NCBI RefSeq assembly: GCF_000315625.1
Contig: NW_005434663.1
Coordinates: forward strand, 525,882-589,881
Reading direction: 5' to 3'
Length of the DNA: 64,000 nucleotides
Source of the DNA: Guillardia theta CCMP2712
Lineage: Eukaryota > Protista > Cryptophyta
Shown in pieces: positions 6,956 through 12,300 of this stretch. How positions within the stretch are numbered: the stretch's first letter is position 1; every line of letters starts with the position of its first letter. The notes beneath the pieces are model-generated. The model was not told where the DNA came from. It worked only from the letters and a program-made list of their open reading frames with translations, and did not search any database. Made by a program: the position numbers and the translations under genes.

Positions 6956-7280
6956 GAAAGCAAGCAGTACAGGCTCGCGGGGGCCTCAAGCGGACGCGAT
7001 GGTGCGGGAATGAGAGGAAAGAAGGAGAGTAAGAAGAGGAGAGAAAGGAAAGAGCTATGGCAGCATTGAGGGAAGAACGTGAATTGAAGGAAGAGAAGAA
7101 AATCAACATCAGGCTCCAGAGCAATATGATTGATTGATCATCTGATACGCATTTCGTTCCGGAGATCACTTGCTCCAAGTCGAACTAAAGCTTCGTCATA
7201 TCGCTTCGTTTAAGCTCGGAATCTGCGCGATTTGACACCTCTGGGAAATTATAGTTTTTAGCTTTGGTACAGGATCATCA

Positions 7281-8409
7281 CATGTACAGCGATATCAAGG
7301 ATTCTGCTAGCTTGCACTCAATGAAGCACTCGAGCATGTTCTCAACGATGCTATCCCGTGTGTTTTCAGAGCACGTCAGAGAGCAGGTAGAACACTTTCG
7401 TTTCCACCCGTCACAGCCTCCCCTCCTGGCATCTTTCCACGATGTCGTGGTCATTTGTGTCGTTTATTTCCTGTCGGTGAGAGCTTTGAAGTTCTTCATG
7501 CGATCGAGGAAGCCGTTCGACCTGCGGTATGTTGTTGCCTTTCACAGCGGGCTGTTAACAGTGGCAAGCTTTGTGCTCTTTGCTTCTTTCATGATGATTT
7601 TGTTCGAAAAGTTTCAGAGCTTCTCGCCCTGGGAGACGATATGCTCATCCGACTTTCATCACGACGGCAACCTGCAATTTCTGTATTATATCAACTATCT
7701 GGTGAAATGGTACGAACTGCTCGACACGGTCATCCTGGTGTTGAGAAAGAAAGAGGTGATATTTCTCCATGAGTATCATCACGCAGCGACGCTCTTCTTG
7801 TGCTGGATACAGCTCGATCAGCATTCTACCGTGCAGTGGGTTCCCATCACCATAAACCTCCTCGTCCATGTCTTCATGTACTACTACTACACGCTGGCGG
7901 CGCTGAAAATCCCAGTCTGGTGGAAGATTTATCTCACTCAGCTCCAGATCGTTCAGTTTGTGATAGACATCGCAGCTTGTAAGCACCTCCGCATGATTCT
8001 TCTTTGCTCTCGTCCCCTTGCGCCAACTGTGATGTGGCGGACAAAGCTTCTGATCCCATCGCAGGTGTGTACGCAAGCAGCCATGAGCCTGTGATCGGAG
8101 GCCTGGGGCTGGCTGGGCTGCTCAGTGAGTATCAGCGCGATCAAGGTCCATCCTTGCGTGACTTTCTATGTCAGGTCCCAGGCCCATGTGCAACGGCACG
8201 CTTAAGGGAGCGCTCGTGGGGGTCGGGGTGATCTTCAGCTATCTCGTGCTCTTTGTCATTTTCTACCTTCAGACTGTGAGTATCTATGCGGGGTGGGTGG
8301 AAAGGGAGAGGGAGAGGGAGAGGGGGGGGGGGGGGATGGGAGGTGGTGGAGGAGGCTGACAGTATAGCAGTACCTGTCGAGGTCAAAGGGCAAGAGGAAA
8401 GAGGAATGA
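7281..8409 (+). CDS. ELO: ELO/GNS1-SUR4 family fatty acid elongase
   Basis: Motifs KWYELLDT, FLHEYHH, HVFMYYYY and TQLQIVQF. Introns at 7979-8064, 8125-8174 and about 8276-8370. Basic C-terminus KGKRKEE*. Confidence 0.93.
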
Positions 8410-8527
8410 GTGGGGGATCTTGGCACAACTGGGACAAGACGAAAGGATGCTTCAGATGCATTCTTCCTTGTTTTTTTACGCAGTTATGGTACAGGGGAAA
8501 CAATAAAACCAGCCAGGATAAACAGAA

Positions 8528-11500
8528 TCAAAGCTCGTTGGTGAGGACGGCGTTGGATGGGATGCCGAGGACCGAAGGCCTCACTTCGATGCCCTGACAA
8601 GAATGTGAGGAGAGGGGGAAAAAAGAAAGAAAACTGCCGCACCCAGACCATGATGAGAACGGCGATGGCAAAACTATTGGGTAGGAGACGAGTTAGTACA
8701 TGGTAGCAGGTGAGATCATAGTGCGAACCTGATCAGCAGGACGATGGTAGTTCCCCAGTTCCTCTGGGTGCTCACAGACCTGCGGACGACTCGCTCAGAG
8801 TTCATGGGAGGCCCTGCAGTGCTCACTGTTGGATCGTGGAATGAGTTTGCACACTCTCGTTGGAAAGCTTGATGATGTTGGCGTTGTGAACTCTGCTGAG
8901 AGACTAGGGAAAGGAGTGAACACAAAGTCATCAGCACTAGCAAGGTATCCACCTGAAACCTGTCCATGTGAGTAGCGATGAAGTGCCTCCTTGAGCTCGT
9001 TTGCAGCTCCTGACAAGCACGTCAGCGATTTGGCAGTGAGAGGCTACGTGAGACGCGAGAGCAGCACCTGCTCGTCGTCGTAGATGATGGATGTGTCCTT
9101 GTAGTCTGAGACCCAGTGGGGGTCCCGCTCTCGGATTCCAATCCAGCAGAGGAAGGAGTCGACCGCACCTGAGAGTTTCTGCTCTGCCGCTAGAGCATAG
9201 TCTTTGGTGAATGAATTCCGGAAGGCAACGTTCAGAGCCATGGAGCAGAAGAGGAGAACGAAACAGGCAATGATGGCAGAGACGTCGAACTTGGTCACCG
9301 AACCACAGGTGTTGGGCTGCAGAAGAGAGCTCATGTAAGTGTCTTCTGTGGATGCCAGAAAGCCAGAATTCGAGAGGTCGGACAAGACTGTGCTCATGCC
9401 TGCCGTCAAGTACGTGGACGCGTAGATCCGAGTCCCGCTGATAGGATCGTCGCAAGTGTCGCAGAAGCAGAGAGCGTTCTGGAGGCCAAACCTCTTGTCA
9501 GAGAGGAGCAGCGGGTCTCCCACAACCTTCAACGGGTTTCCGCACTCCTTAGCGTAGAGCCCCGAGCTCAAGAAATACTGCAAGAGATCGGCATGCGGAA
9601 CCACCATGGCCGCGACCTTCCCGTTCAGCACAGCCTTGCCGCATTCCTCTAGCGATGAAGCCGTGATAGGCTTGAAGCCAAAAATTGTAGATAGTTGCTT
9701 GTAGTAGGTGCGCTCAAGAACGCAGATGTCTACCCCGACCAACCCTGACACGTCTTGGATGTTCGCTGCCTCCTGCATGTTGTTGATCTCGTCCACCACA
9801 GCTCCACTGAAGAGTCCGAAGCAAATGAGACCAAAGATCATCCAAAACGACCCAAACAATTTCCCAATCAGAGTCGTCGGAACTTTGTCTCCATAGCCAA
9901 CAGTCGTCACCGTGACTGCCGTGTACCACAAACCGTCCATGACACCCTCAGCATAGAATTTCCTGAACAGGTCATTGTAGCGGTGCTCAACAATCCAGAA
10001 AATGTGGCCCATCACAAAGATGAAGAAGAAGAAGATCGACAGGAAGTTGATGAAAGACGGTGAGAAGAGCATGAGGAACATTGCGAGACCTCGAGAAATC
10101 AGTGGAGGATTCGTCTTCACGACAATAACAAAGCCGTCACCCTTCCACAGGCTGTCTGTGCATTGATATTTATCGATCTGTATGCTCGTATTCTGAGGTG
10201 AATACCTCAGCTGGTTGAAGTTGGAGATCAGAGTTCCTCGGAGTGGAGGCGGCCAAAATTTCTTGTCGTTGGACCCAGAAGTCGGAGCTGTTGATAGCAG
10301 AACACTGAGGTCAGTGACGACGTTGAAGGTGATGTTGTAGTTCAGACGGGCGGCAATCTCCTTGATTACATCGATGGTGTATCCTTTCGGCTCCACCATC
10401 CACTTGGGCAACCTTGGAAAGTACCCGCTCGGTTGCAATTCGTCCTGCGCGGTGCAAAATCCAAAGTAGCTGCAACCTCTGCCAGACACACAATCTTGAT
10501 CGCTTGCACACGTGTGCTTCAGGTTTTCTGCTGTTGCTGATGCGTTGCACGCTGCTGACGAGCATTTGCTCTGGTTCAACTCAACTTCAACGAAAGGAGG
10601 ATTGTTTTGAATCTGGACCTCCAACAAGCATGAACGTGACCATGGGGATCGGAGCAGTGACCTATTGTATTCGATAGAACCTGTCAATGAGCAATCATGG
10701 AAGATTGTGTAGTAGAAGTATCTGGTAGAGTCGATGGTGTTGATGGACCTGGAAGCGTCATACCTTGAGAAATCACTGTAACTCTCTACAAAATCTCCTA
10801 GAACCCATTCAGTGCTGTTCAGGATGTAGTTGCCATCGATGTCAGCAGCAATGAACTTCCTCTCTAAGAAAGAGATGCGGCCATCGCTGTTCAGGTCGTG
10901 CAGGTTGAAATTGATGGGATAGAGGTATTGGTTGTCCACTGCGCCACCCGTCGTCTTCTTGTAGAGAGAAAGATAGTACTCGCTCTTAGAAACATACTCG
11001 TCTCCATTCGTATCCGCAAACACCTTGAAGTAATGCTCCTCCAACGAGATTCGCTGGCTTCCATCCAAGTCTTCTTCCTGTAATGCTTGTGCGATCTCAG
11101 CCGTGGTCGGCTCACGCACGAGCGAGGGATCCCAGCCGTTGGACATGTAGATGTCCAGAAGCGCTAGCACAGACACTGAGTACCACATCTGCAGCTGTCC
11201 GCTGTCTGTCAAAGGCGACACATCGTCAAGGCAACGAGGGAACAGAGCACAGAGATTTTCGTACCTCGGAACAACCCCCCGAGAGGCCCGTTGTTCAAGG
11301 ACTTCCCATCGTCAAGATTCTGCACAGGACCAGACTTGCAGACGTGCGTGATGGCCCAGAAGTGTCTCAGCACAAAGTACTCTTCCTGGCTGAGAACTCC
11401 ATCCTTGTCCAGGTCTGCCTGGTGGAACGAATATTGAGGGTTCAGGCGATTGGCGGATACCAGCCAACGATTGGGTCCTGAATGCATGTATGGGCTGAAT

Positions 11501-11910
11501 TCAGCGAATGACAGGGTCCCACTGGCATTCGTATCCAGGTTGGCAAACTCAGTTCTAAACTTGTTGCAGTTTAGCTCTGGGTCAAACGAGAACGAGATTG
11601 GTGCGTTTCTTGGATAATTCAGAGTCCATACGCAGAACCTGCAGCAGAAGTAGTAGTTCTTGATGTACTCCAATCCCGGAACATACTTGCTCGGTGGATT
11701 TGTAGCTGTCCACCACAGGTCTGCAGGTAACTGGGTCCTGAAGAAATCGGCATCATTTGTAGCGCAGGAGAACGATTCTTGAGATGTGATGGGTGCTTGG
11801 CATGAGCTAGAACACTCTCTCAAGAGCAGAATGGACACCAGACACATCAACTTCGCCTTCGCCTTCATGTTCCATATGTTCTTCATCTTCATCTTCATCT
11901 TCATCTTCAT
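8528..11910 (-). CDS. Ionotropic glutamate receptor-like channel with a K+ channel pore (GluR0/AvGluR1 type) and N-terminal EF-hands
   Basis: Signal peptide; six EF-hand loops; S1 (NNPPFVEV...KGYTIDVIKEIA); M1; pore GLWYTAVTVTTVGYGDKVP; M3; S2 (IQDVSGLVGVDICVLERT); M4. ORFs 11209-11916 and 9044-11221 join through a short intron starting near 11263. The 3' exons down to about 8528 are inferred. Confidence 0.85.
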
Positions 11911-11959
11911 GTCCACGTTCGTCGCCGTCCGCCTACACCGCTCTTACTGTTTGCACCAT

Positions 11960-12300
11960 GGCTGTAGACCACCCCAACAATATCATCAAAGCAACTACCC
12001 TACCCCTCTTAAAATGGGACCCCACCCTACCGAATGTCGGAAGATTCCCACAAGATGGAGTTACCTACTACCCCCACCTCAACCCTCAATGGAAATTGAC
12101 CACCCCAAACATCCCACCCACTACCATCCACACAAAAGTCATATCCTGGACACTATTACCCTAACCCCTTTTTCCTAACAGTCGCTACCCTGACTACCCC
12201 ACAGATACGTACTGACCTACCAGGGAAAATTGGTGCAAGTTATGGTCAATATGACCGGTACTCTGCTTTACTGAGCCCACCCTCACCCCAGCCTTTCGGA
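11960..12300. promoter_or_regulatory. ACCCC/TACCC-motif array (GGGGT on the - strand) in a divergent promoter
   Basis: More than 10 CACCCC/TACCC/CTACCCC motifs between the channel gene and the FANCC-like gene, followed by a GA-rich tract. Confidence 0.55.

What the first reader, a model, noticed from the sequence alone, without database searches (positions are those of the whole stretch)
8528..11910. K+-filter glutamate-receptor channel with six extracellular EF-hands replacing the amino-terminal domain
Seen: a signal peptide, then six canonical EF-hand loops (LDTNASGTLSFAEF, ADLDKDGVLSQEEY, EDLDGSQRISLEEH, ADTNGDEYVSKSEY, HDLNSDGRISFLER, ADIDGNYILNSTEW), then the iGluR order S1-M1-P-M3-S2-M4 with an intact TTVGYGD filter. 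Known: cyanobacterial GluR0 has the K+ filter but no M4 or amino-terminal domain. Rotifer AvGluR1 has the filter plus M4. Animal and plant iGluRs carry a LIVBP-like amino-terminal domain. Secreted multi-EF-hand arrays are typical of CREC proteins (calumenin/reticulocalbin). Inference: a ligand-gated K+ channel modulated by external or luminal Ca2+. I do not know this architecture from any characterised receptor.
Basis: partly seen in the sequence, partly recalled or inferred. Interest (0 to 1): 0.88.

Follow-up and report, generated by a model that had tools for sequence, protein, structure and literature searches.

The report
EF-hand-capped potassium-type glutamate-receptor-like channel
A cryptophyte alga expresses a glutamate-receptor-type channel with a bacterial-style potassium pore. 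Six conserved calcium-binding EF-hand loops sit on its outer side, where animal and plant receptors carry their amino-terminal domain. I found no paper describing this build, and its function is untested.

Summary
Window 11910..8528 (minus strand) holds one expressed gene of seven exons encoding 1021 aa. Spliced transcript contigs from three studies join all exons.

The domain order is:
- signal peptide and a Cys-rich head
- six EF-hand loops
- S1, M1, P-loop with TTVGYGD, M3, S2, M4
- a cytosolic stretch of about 100 aa

Main evidence:
- Six EF loops are found where 0.07 are expected by chance. Their Ca-ligand positions hold in 17/20 to 22/22 homologues.
- S1 and S2 model as a periplasmic-binding-protein clamshell (Z 16-17 to LAO, GlnBP, GluR0, GluN1 and GLR3 ligand-binding domains).
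- Each LBD half alone matches bacterial GluR0-like halves (hhalign 96-97%). The pore is about 40% identical to them.
- The genome (87.1 Mb, 669 contigs, fits Guillardia theta) has three such genes. It also has at least six conventional iGluR loci with SYTANLA-like gates and no GYG.
- The family occurs across Cryptophyceae, including plastid-less Goniomonas.

Caveats:
- The S2 Asp/Glu that binds the ligand's amino group is His or Arg here, and the S1 Arg is not clearly kept. The agonist is probably not bound as in known iGluRs.
- Ca2+ regulation, location and K+ selectivity are inferred, not shown.

I rate it a new variant of a known kind.

The parts
8528..11910 (-). Whole CDS of seven exons: 11910-11265, 11205-9068, 9009-8953, 8903-8827, 8779-8729, 8673-8643, 8593-8528 (stop 8530-8528). 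It encodes 1021 aa.
   Evidence: Spliced contigs in three studies plus raw reads. GT..AG check. Translation.
11803..11910 (-). Putative signal peptide (aa 1-36). It includes an (ATGAAG)5 repeat giving MKMKMKMKMK, so the true start ATG could be 11910 to 11847.
   Evidence: The hydrophobic h-region LMCLVSILLL is followed by SSS|C. Homologues have an equivalent N-terminal hydrophobic segment before a conserved S-C. No predictor was run.
11566..11802 (-). Cys-rich head of the ectodomain (aa 37-115) with the motifs SCxxPxTxxExFxC, CCRxCVW and LxC.
   Evidence: The cysteines are conserved across about 20 homologues.
11380..11535 (-). EF1 (11535-11500) and EF2 (11415-11380), a canonical EF-hand pair.
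   Evidence: Pfam EF-hand_5 at 32.4 bits and EF-hand_1 at 29.7 bits, both above cut-off. In the model of homologue P0003 this pair aligns to TnC, polcalcin and calbindin D9k lobes with Z 8-10 and rmsd about 2 A over about 70 aa.
11206..11264 (-). Intron 1 (59 nt, GT..AG), lying between the EF2 exon and the EF3-to-M4 exon.
10808..11071 (-). EF3 (11071-11036), EF4 (11014-10979), EF5 (10897-10862) and EF6 (10843-10808). Loops 3/4 and 5/6 are only 7 and 6 aa apart and share a helix.
   Evidence: Regex match and conservation in 20/21 to 22/22 homologues. Secondary structure of the model. Atlas features are EF-hand at 0.90.
10109..10645 (-). S1 half of the ligand-binding domain (aa 403-581). It contains a Cys-rich insertion (10564-10454) at the position of NMDA-receptor loop 1.
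   Evidence: VIA-align Z 16-17 to PBP and iGluR LBDs. hhalign to bacterial S1: probability 96.4%, E 1.2e-9. The GluN1 loop-1 alignment is marginal at E 0.011.
9782..10060 (-). Pore module: M1 (10060-9986), P-loop with TTVGYGD (9907-9887) and M3 (9871-9782).
   Evidence: Ion_trans_2 1.3e-12. K+ channel pores in PDB up to 1.9e-9. About 40% identity to bacterial GluR0-like pores, E 5e-26.
9308..9772 (-). S2 half of the ligand-binding domain (aa 694-848). His753 (9595-9593) sits where GluR0, GlnBP and iGluRs have the Asp/Glu that binds the alpha-amino group.
   Evidence: hhalign to bacterial S2: probability 97.3%, E 2.1e-11 over 123 columns. The D-to-H/R substitution appears in three independent alignments.
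9218..9283 (-). M4 transmembrane helix (aa 857-878).
   Evidence: Hydropathy peak of 2.47. Conserved in the family and absent in the bacterial relatives. Basic residues follow it in homologues (KHRRRRY).
8755..9217 (-). Cytosolic segment between M4 and M5 (aa 879-981), spanning exons 2 to 5.
   Evidence: Family alignment. No Pfam domain was found there.
8531..8754 (-). M5 transmembrane helix (aa 982-1003, exons 5-7) and an 18-aa conserved tail (VRPSVLGIPSNAVLTNEL).
   Evidence: Hydropathy peak of 2.74. Conserved across both subfamilies.

Best explanation
The gene encodes a subunit of a tetrameric, K+-selective channel of the ionotropic-glutamate-receptor superfamily. Its closest relatives are the bacterial GluR0 type.

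Inferred topology. After a cleaved signal peptide, a Cys-rich domain of about 370 aa with six Ca2+-binding EF-hand loops sits on the non-cytosolic side, extracellular or luminal. It is joined by a conserved helix and a PWSxSC motif to a bilobed S1/S2 ligand-binding clamshell. The clamshell is interrupted by an inverted K+ channel pore (M1, P-loop with TTVGYGD, M3). M4, a cytosolic segment and a fifth TM helix follow.

Most likely mechanism. Closure of the clamshell on a small ligand pulls the M3 gate open, as in GluR0 and iGluRs. Ca2+ occupancy of the EF-hand domain sets or modulates that coupling from the same side of the membrane. The domain stands in the position of the LIVBP-type amino-terminal domain.

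Shown: one spliced transcript, the domain order, conservation of the Ca-ligand positions, the predicted clamshell fold, an intact K+ filter, and kinship to GluR0-type proteins.

Inferred: the topology, K+ selectivity, tetramer formation, Ca2+ binding and its effect, and the existence and identity of the agonist. The agonist is probably not bound like an alpha-amino acid in known iGluRs.
For: - One transcript: spliced contigs from three studies and raw RNA reads.
- Full-length collinear homologues from cryptophyte transcriptomes.
- Six EF loops against 0.07 expected. Ca-ligand positions are kept in 17/20, 22/22, 22/22, 22/22, 21/21 and 20/21 homologues at 23-49% identity.
- EF1-2 is a canonical pair in the model of homologue P0003: Z 10.0, rmsd 2.1 A, 70 aa.
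- The N-terminal 400 aa of P0003 fold as one compact domain with pLDDT 81 and pTM 0.81.
- In the LBD-TMD model (pLDDT 77), the best Foldseek hits are NMDA and AMPA LBD-TMD chains at E about 1e-13.
- The clamshell scores Z 16-17 over 210-230 aa.
- S1 and S2 are each homologous to bacterial GluR0-like halves without using the pore.
- BLASTP to a 434-aa GluR0-like protein covers S1, pore and S2 at 29% identity over 298 aa, E 3e-25.
- The filter TVTTVGYGDK is nearly invariant.
- The ectodomain carries many conserved cysteines and seven N-x-S/T sequons. Basic residues follow M4.
- GluR0 topology was shown by experiment to be inverted relative to K+ channels (PMC13099474).
Against: - No functional, localisation or Ca2+-binding data exist.
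- The window protein's Pfam Lig_chan score (24.6 bits) is below the cut-off of 30.8.
- The S2 acidic residue is His or Arg, and the S1 Arg is not alignable with confidence. The clamshell may bind something unexpected or nothing.
- In seawater, with about 10 mM Ca2+ (general knowledge), ordinary EF-hands would be permanently loaded. Regulation therefore needs low affinity or an internal membrane.
- EF3-6 have non-canonical spacing and were not fold-searched on their own.
- The signal peptide was judged by eye.
- The structure models rest on shallow alignments of 18-34 sequences.
Confidence: 0.6

Rival explanations
1. The architecture is as described, but the EF-hand domain is a constitutively Ca2+-loaded structural or assembly domain. 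It would stabilise the ectodomain and drive tetramer assembly, as the ATD does, without acting as a sensor. Gating would depend only on the clamshell ligand.
For: - The organism fits Guillardia theta, a marine alga by my own knowledge, not shown by a tool here. External Ca2+ would then be about 10 mM (general knowledge).
- Extracellular EF-hands such as those of SPARC/BM-40 serve structure (general knowledge). Weak SPARC_Ca_bdg hits appear.
- The domain is compact, Cys-rich and rigidly linked to S1.
Against: - Six loops are conserved at every ligand position across marine and freshwater cryptophytes, including Cryptomonas curvata. That is more than stability would usually need.
- An internal-membrane location is not excluded.
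Confidence: 0.25
2. Ca2+ is the primary gating signal. The clamshell has lost agonist binding and serves only as a mechanical link, which makes this an exoplasmic Ca2+-gated K+ channel built on an iGluR chassis.
For: - The canonical S2 Asp/Glu is replaced by His or Arg in all family members.
- The S1 Arg of the bacterial ITxxR motif is not conserved in the MAFFT alignment.
- The EF domain is coupled to S1 by the nearly invariant PWSxSC motif.
Against: - The clamshell is well conserved and predicted with high confidence.
- S/T residues are retained at the start of the S2 helix that contacts ligands in relatives.
- The window's subfamily keeps an Arg two residues downstream (QLRY).
- The S1 alignment in that stretch is unreliable.
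Confidence: 0.12
3. The EF-hands are cytosolic and the protein is an ordinary internally Ca2+-activated K+ channel. Alternatively, the fusion is an assembly or annotation artefact.
For: The signal peptide was not tested with a predictor. EF-hands are mostly cytosolic (general knowledge).
Against: - One spliced transcript is found in three independent studies.
- The same fusion is present in about 20 homologues from transcriptomes.
- S1 and S2 flank a 2TM pore, so they must lie on one side. GluR0 has them outside (PMC13099474).
- The domain has conserved cysteines and sequons, and basic residues follow M4.
Confidence: 0.03

Closest known systems
GluR0 and prokaryotic 'group 1' K+-filter glutamate receptors (Synechocystis slr1257; Chen et al. 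1999; Ger et al. 2010, PMC2950845)
   Same: - Interleaved order S1, M1, P, M3, S2.
- TxVGYGD filter, with the pore about 40% identical.
- S1 and S2 each homologous.
- No SYTANLAAF gate motif.
- LBD fold match to 1ii5 and 2pyy at Z about 16.6-16.9.
   Different: This protein is eukaryotic and spliced. It has M4, an M5 helix and a cytosolic segment, plus a 370-aa EF-hand ectodomain and Cys-rich insertions in S1 and S2. The Asp that binds the alpha-amino group is His.
AvGluR1 of the rotifer Adineta vaga (Janovjak et al. 2011)
   Same: A eukaryotic iGluR with a K+ channel signature sequence and a fourth TM helix, as described in PMC11479355 and PMC3483616.
   Different: AvGluR1 is described there as having the modular architecture of GLRs and iGluRs, with no EF-hands reported.
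Conventional eukaryotic iGluRs and plant GLRs, including at least six loci in this same genome
   Same: LBD clamshell, M4, and an insertion in S1 at the place of NMDA-receptor loop 1 (marginal, E 0.011). Foldseek's best hits are NMDA and AMPA LBD-TMD chains.
   Different: Those have SYTANLA-like M3 gates and no GYG filter, and LIVBP-type ATDs in animals and plants (general knowledge). S1, pore and S2 of this protein all score better against bacterial GluR0-likes than against the conventional iGluRs of the same genome.
Exoplasmic EF-hand proteins: the CREC family (reticulocalbin, calumenin), SPARC/BM-40 and STIM1 EF-SAM
   Same: EF-hands in the secretory pathway or lumen. CREC proteins have six of them. 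STIM1 is a precedent for a luminal low-affinity EF-hand sensor that controls a channel (general knowledge).
   Different: Only weak shape matches were found: reticulocalbin-2 cluster TM 0.27/0.35 and a SPARC_Ca_bdg-bearing cluster TM 0.29. Loop spacing differs, with shared-helix double loops. There is no HDEL-type tail, and the domain is covalently part of a channel.

Membership tests
Ionotropic glutamate receptor superfamily (iGluR/GluR0) | Ligand-binding domain split into S1 and S2 by a pore module (M1, re-entrant P-loop, M3) | tested here: met
   BLASTP to GluR0-like P0030 spans S1, pore and S2. hhalign of S1 and S2 run separately gives 96.4% and 97.3%.
Ionotropic glutamate receptor superfamily (iGluR/GluR0) | S1S2 folds as a type II periplasmic-binding-protein clamshell | tested here: met
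   In the AF2 model, residues 187-630 of the exon-2 protein align to LAO, GlnBP, GluR0, GluN1 and GLR3.x LBDs with Z 16-17, 210-230 aa and rmsd 3.3-5 A. This is a predicted structure, not a solved one.
Ionotropic glutamate receptor superfamily (iGluR/GluR0) | Pfam Lig_chan (PF00060) at or above the gathering score | tested here: inconclusive
   The window protein scores 24.6 bits against a cut-off of 30.8. Paralogue P0017 from the same genome scores 35.2 and passes.
Ionotropic glutamate receptor superfamily (iGluR/GluR0) | Conserved agonist-binding residues: the S1 Arg for the alpha-carboxylate and the S2 Asp/Glu for the alpha-amino group | tested here: not met
   The S2 Asp of the bacterial VYDAP motif aligns to His (PHAD) here and to His or Arg across the family in three alignments. 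The S1 Arg aligns to Asn in MAFFT, but that stretch is not covered by hhalign, so this half is uncertain.
Eukaryotic iGluR/GLR (animal and plant type) | LIVBP-like amino-terminal domain and SYTANLAAF-type M3 gate | tested here: not met
   No ANF_receptor hit was found, and the N-terminal domain is EF-hand. M3 reads FWMIFGLICFGLFSGAVV. Six other loci in the same genome do carry SYTANLA-like motifs.
Eukaryotic iGluR/GLR (animal and plant type) | Fourth transmembrane helix (M4) after S2 | tested here: met
   A hydropathy peak at aa 859-877 is conserved in the family and absent from the bacterial relatives. Its equivalence to iGluR M4 rests on position only.
GluR0-type (prokaryotic K+-selective glutamate receptor) | K+ channel signature TxVGYGD in the P-loop | tested here: met
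   TTVGYGD is at aa 649-655. The columns T, T, V, G, Y, G, D are invariant or nearly so across 34 sequences.
GluR0-type (prokaryotic K+-selective glutamate receptor) | Minimal architecture with no M4 and no N-terminal domain | tested here: not met
   M4, M5 and a 370-aa EF-hand domain are present.
EF-hand Ca2+-binding domains | 12-residue loop with ligands at positions 1, 3, 5 and 12 and a hydrophobic residue at 8, flanked by helices | tested here: met
   Six loops match and are conserved across the family. Pfam EF-hand_1 and EF-hand_5 are above cut-off on exon 1. Helices flank the loops in both models.
EF-hand Ca2+-binding domains | Loops arranged as four-helix pairs | tested here: inconclusive
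   EF1-2 form a canonical pair, with Z 10.0 and rmsd 2.1 A in the homologue model. EF3/4 and EF5/6 are separated by only 7 and 6 residues and share one helix. That part was not fold-searched alone. Pfam Dockerin_1 passes its cut-off over EF4-EF5 of P0008.
EF-hand Ca2+-binding domains | Actual Ca2+ binding | not testable with these tools
   This needs ITC, 45Ca overlay or a structure.
CREC family (reticulocalbin, calumenin) | Soluble luminal protein of six canonical EF-hand pairs with a C-terminal retention signal | tested here: not met
   The domain is part of a membrane channel. The shape match to the reticulocalbin-2 cluster is weak, at TM 0.27/0.35. The protein ends ...LTNEL after a TM helix.

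The most novel reading that the evidence does not exclude
The channel sits in an internal Ca2+ store membrane (ER, nuclear envelope, the outermost plastid membrane continuous with the ER, or a vacuole). Its luminal EF-hand domain would act as a low-affinity store-Ca2+ sensor, as STIM1 EF-SAM does, and directly gate a K+ counter-ion conductance. The clamshell would bind a non-amino-acid ligand or none. That would be an iGluR-derived, luminal-Ca2+-gated K+ channel, a coupling not known for any iGluR.
Probability: 0.15. Interest if true: 0.9.

Novelty: new variant of a known kind. Interest (0 to 1): 0.72.

Why it matters
iGluR evolution is usually told as three steps: a bacterial binding protein joined to an inverted K+ pore (GluR0), then M4, then a LIVBP-type amino-terminal domain, with loss of K+ selectivity. 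This cryptophyte family is a natural intermediate that went another way. It kept the GluR0-type K+ pore and gained M4, and then a fifth helix. It filled the amino-terminal position with a Ca2+-binding EF-hand module instead.

Two things follow.
- It is an independent example that the slot above the ligand-binding domain accepts unrelated regulatory modules.
- It is a candidate for direct sensing of external or luminal Ca2+ by an iGluR-type channel.

Practical points also favour follow-up. The host is a model alga with a sequenced genome. The gene is expressed, and full-length cDNA sequences exist for several species, so electrophysiology and structure work can start directly. The altered binding-site residues also make it a case for studying ligand-specificity change in this superfamily.

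Tried and rejected
- Sequence search of PDB with the exon-2 protein returned only K+ channel pores. The LBD was invisible to phmmer and needed profiles and a structure model.
- Pfam SBP_bac_3 (E 0.057) and Lig_chan-Glu_bd (E 0.12) on the window protein are too weak to use alone.
- A seventh EF-like pattern in S2 (aa 825-836, DLSNSGFLASTE) is not conserved in homologues, so I took it as chance or lineage-specific.
- I considered whether the LBD came from the conventional iGluRs of the same genome and only the pore from a GluR0 type (a chimera). S1, pore and S2 all score better against bacterial GluR0-likes, though S1 and S2 only weakly, so I rejected this.
- I considered plastid targeting. The conserved Cys-rich domain begins right at the predicted signal-peptide cleavage site, which leaves no room for a transit peptide. 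This is inference only.
- A whole-domain shape search of the N-terminal model found only generic multi-EF-hand proteins: TM 0.34 or less by query in the Atlas and TMq 0.17 or less in PDB. Nothing matched the entire domain.
- Proteins matching only the N-terminal part (P0042, P0044, P0055, P0056, P0067, P0162) carry no other Pfam domain and look like fragments of the same family.
- The source of the EF-less K+-filter relatives P0038 and P0039 could not be identified; they come from metagenome contigs.
- No phylogeny with AvGluR1, plant GLRs or animal iGluRs was built, because no such sequences were available by reference and I did not type sequences from memory.
- The spliced full-length protein was not sent to the restricted tools. 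Exon-2 and homologue references were used instead.
- The earlier scan note naming the genome Guillardia theta (s1-432836) was checked only through genome size and contig number, and through the length of contig C41, which equals the 611,318-bp contig carrying the NCBI G. theta protein P0017.
Full report
**Gene model and expression**

The region holds two long minus-strand ORFs, 11916-11209 and 11221-9044. They are joined in frame by a 59-nt GT..AG intron at 11264-11206. I laid public runs on 8300-12100. Single contigs from three runs of three different studies cover 11838 down to 8371-8507. These runs are RNA only by the tool's guess; the spliced form of the contigs is what shows they are transcripts. 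They carry the same six joints, with no base differences. Raw RNA-seq reads from a fourth study confirm the three 3'-most joints. After shifting each joint to its GT..AG position, the seven exons translate into one 1021-aa protein. It runs from the first ATG (11910) to TGA (8530-8528). The contigs stop at 11838 inside an (ATGAAG)5 repeat, so which of the in-frame ATGs between 11910 and 11847 is used remains open.

**Organism and family**

The window lies in an assembly of 87.1 Mb in 669 contigs. An earlier scan note calls it Guillardia theta. Contig C41 has the same length, 611,318 bp, as the contig carrying the NCBI G. theta protein GUITHDRAFT_163588 (P0017).

- The genome has three loci of this family: C11 (this gene), C41 and C49.
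- Homologues at 31-49% identity come from Rhodomonas abbreviata, Hanusia phi, Cryptomonas curvata, Goniomonas and unnamed marine transcriptomes.
- Sources call them only 'EF-hand domain-containing protein' or 'Calmodulin'.
- A scan of 1.84 billion cluster representatives finds 27 clusters at E<1e-30. After those come bacterial proteins of about 350-700 aa that match the pore and the start of S2.
- Two complete transcript-derived homologues, P0003 and P0008, are collinear with all seven exons. That includes the exon 1/2 junction (GGLFR|D|SGQLQMWY against GGFFLDFGQLQVWF) and the last exon.

**The EF-hand ectodomain**

- After a hydrophobic N-terminal segment comes a head with conserved cysteines (SCxxPxTxxExFxC, CCRxCVW, LxC).
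- Six 12-residue loops fit D-x-[DNS]-x-[DNSG]-x-x-[hydrophobic]-x-x-x-[ED]. Shuffles of the first 400 aa give a mean of 0.07 matches and never more than 2 in 20,000 trials.
- Across 20-22 homologues, all five diagnostic positions are kept in 17/20, 22/22, 22/22, 22/22, 21/21 and 20/21 sequences for EF1 to EF6.
- Pfam EF-hand_1 and EF-hand_5 pass their cut-offs on exon 1 and score much higher on homologues.
- An AlphaFold2 model of P0003 residues 1-400 is one compact domain with pLDDT 81 and pTM 0.81.
- Its EF1-EF2 part is a canonical pair: Z 10.0, rmsd 2.1 A over 70 aa to a troponin-C-based sensor, and Z about 8 to polcalcin, calbindin D9k and calmodulin lobes.
- Foldseek gives calmodulin, calcineurin B and troponin C at E about 1e-3 with low TM-scores. 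The Atlas shape search gives only generic multi-EF-hand proteins at TM 0.34 or less. The whole domain therefore has no close structural match.
- EF3/EF4 and EF5/EF6 are unusual. The loops are 7 and 6 residues apart and share one helix. Pfam Dockerin_1 passes its cut-off over EF4-EF5 of P0008.
Language-model features class it with EF-hand clusters at 0.90.

**The channel core**

- Ion_trans_2 scores 1.3e-12 and the filter TTVGYGD is intact. The columns around it (HIxWxxERxxNxxF...VTVTTVGYGDKxP) are shared with bacterial GluR0-like proteins at about 40% identity.
- BLASTP against a 434-aa bacterial GluR0-like protein (SBP_bac_3, Lig_chan-Glu_bd, Lig_chan and Ion_trans_2) covers S1, M1, P, M3 and S2: 29% identity over 298 aa, E 3e-25.
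- With the pore left out, profile-profile comparison still links the family's S1 to bacterial S1 (96.4%, E 1.2e-9, 51 columns). It also links S2 to bacterial S2 (97.3%, E 2.1e-11, 123 columns).
- An AlphaFold2 model of the exon-2 protein (712 aa, pLDDT 77, pTM 0.67) has NMDA and AMPA LBD-TMD chains as its best Foldseek hits, at E about 1e-13 over about 520 columns.
- Its S1/S2 part aligns to LAO, GlnBP, GluR0 (2pyy Z 16.9, 1ii5 Z 16.6), GluN1, GluD1, kainate-receptor and GLR3.x ligand-binding cores. These give Z 16-17 over 210-230 residues.
- The clamshell is therefore confirmed as far as prediction can go.
- A Cys-rich insertion in S1 lies where NMDA receptors have loop 1. The family's S1 profile has GluN1 as its best PDB hit, but only at E 0.011.

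**Beyond GluR0**

- M4 (aa 857-878) is present in all family members and absent from the bacterial relatives.
- After M4, homologues carry a basic cluster (KHRRRRY). Then come about 100 conserved residues, a fifth TM helix (aa 982-1003) and a conserved 18-aa tail.
It would put the C-terminus back on the ectodomain side.
- The same genome has at least six conventional Lig_chan loci with SYTANLA-like M3 motifs and no GYG. S1, pore and S2 of the present protein all score better against the bacterial proteins than against these. The EF-hand family is thus a separate, GluR0-like lineage living beside ordinary eukaryotic iGluRs.

**Ligand site**

- Bacterial relatives have the invariant motif AxVYDAPxLQxY. 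Its Asp corresponds to the residue that binds the agonist's alpha-amino group in GlnBP, LAO and iGluRs (established structural knowledge).
- In the cryptophyte family that position is His (AMVVPHADLLQYF here) or Arg. This holds in the MAFFT alignment, the HMMER alignment to AncQR 4zv1 and hhalign.
- The S1 Arg of ITxxRE aligns to Asn in MAFFT. The window's subfamily keeps an Arg two residues on (QLRY), and hhalign does not cover this stretch, so that half is uncertain.
- S/T residues are retained at the start of the S2 helix.
- I conclude that the agonist, if any, is probably not held like an alpha-amino acid in known receptors. I cannot name it.

**Topology and mechanism (inference)**

- S1 and S2 flank a 2TM-plus-P-loop module, so they lie on one side of the membrane. 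GluR0 was shown by experiment to have the inverted orientation with the soluble domains outside (PMC13099474).
- Four features place the EF-hand domain with the LBD on the non-cytosolic side:
  - the N-terminal signal-like segment
  - the many conserved cysteines
  - seven sequons in the ectodomain
  - the basic cluster after M4
- The domain is tied to S1 by a long helix and the nearly invariant PWSxSC motif. That suits mechanical coupling.
- The most likely working model is a tetrameric K+ channel opened by clamshell closure and tuned by Ca2+ bound to the EF-hand layer.
- At marine Ca2+ levels, ordinary EF-hands would be saturated. Either the affinity is low, or the Ca2+ is structural, or the channel sits in an internal store membrane. 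These are the rival readings and the novel case.

**Novelty**

- Six full-text searches found no paper on an iGluR with EF-hands or on this cryptophyte family.
- A broad 2025 iGluR phylogeny mentions Cryptista sequences only inside the plant/sponge 'lambda' clade and has no EF-hand term.
- A 2023 review lists GluR0 and AvGluR1 as the K+-type receptors.
- The library is limited to open-access papers and preprints, so an earlier mention elsewhere cannot be excluded.
- The parts are all known kinds (GluR0-type core, M4, EF-hands). The combination, the extra M5 and the altered binding site make it a new variant of a known kind.

Noticed in passing
Proteins P0022-P0037 (bacterial; not in the window): Bacterial GluR0-like K+-filter channels of 690-735 aa carry an extra N-terminal OpuAC/ProX-type binding-protein domain (PF04069) ahead of the SBP_bac_3/Lig_chan core. 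Sources name them 'glycine betaine/L-proline ABC transporter substrate-binding protein ProX'. This could be a prokaryotic analogue of an amino-terminal domain, and the naming looks like misannotation.
   Followed up: no
window 11881-11910 (-): An (ATGAAG)5 microsatellite forms the start of the CDS (MKMKMKMKMK). Transcript contigs end at 11838 and the reads tool skipped 11839-11922 as repeat, so the 5' end and the start codon actually used are unresolved.
   Followed up: partly
window 8246-8507 (+/-): The plus-strand ELO-like neighbour (ORF 7264-8094 and onward) has a 95-nt GT..AG intron at 8276-8370. Its last exon overlaps the channel gene's 3' UTR, and one assembled contig runs from the channel mRNA straight into the spliced neighbour. 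The two genes are convergent with overlapping 3' ends.
   Followed up: partly
G000 C110:4863-5192, C79:68020-68337, C85:153968-154147, C120:194283-194573, C195:74970-75272, C29:615477-615818 (L013-L018): The same genome has at least six conventional iGluR-type loci, with SYTANLA-like M3 motifs and no GYG filter. Some carry Cys-rich inserts in S2 (CGSPGGFC..., CGNSGGYC...) at the place where the EF-hand family has CGNPLK.
   Followed up: partly
window 9344-9379 (-), aa 825-836: There is a seventh EF-loop-like pattern, DLSNSGFLASTE, inside S2. About 0.06 are expected by chance and it is not conserved in homologues.
   Followed up: yes
P0038/P0039; L021, L022 (metagenome contigs): These are intronless proteins of 648-676 aa with the same TVTTVGYGDK pore, a Lig_chan match and an M4-like C-terminal TM, but no EF-hands. 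Their organism is unknown. They may be another K+-filter iGluR lineage with M4.
   Followed up: partly
G000:C41:1359-3369 (L019); protein P0017 (GUITHDRAFT_163588): The public model of this paralogue leaves the family alignment after CGNPMRIL and ends in a low-complexity R/H/P-rich tail. The near-identical P0021 continues normally through S2, M4 and beyond. The 3' exons of the public model are probably wrong.
   Followed up: partly
P0008 aa 269-328 (homologue); equivalent to window 10862-11014 (-): Pfam Dockerin_1 passes its gathering score (24.1 against 22.9) across EF4-EF5. This hints that the middle loops resemble the duplicated loop-helix 'F-hand' of dockerins more than a classical EF pair.
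   Followed up: no
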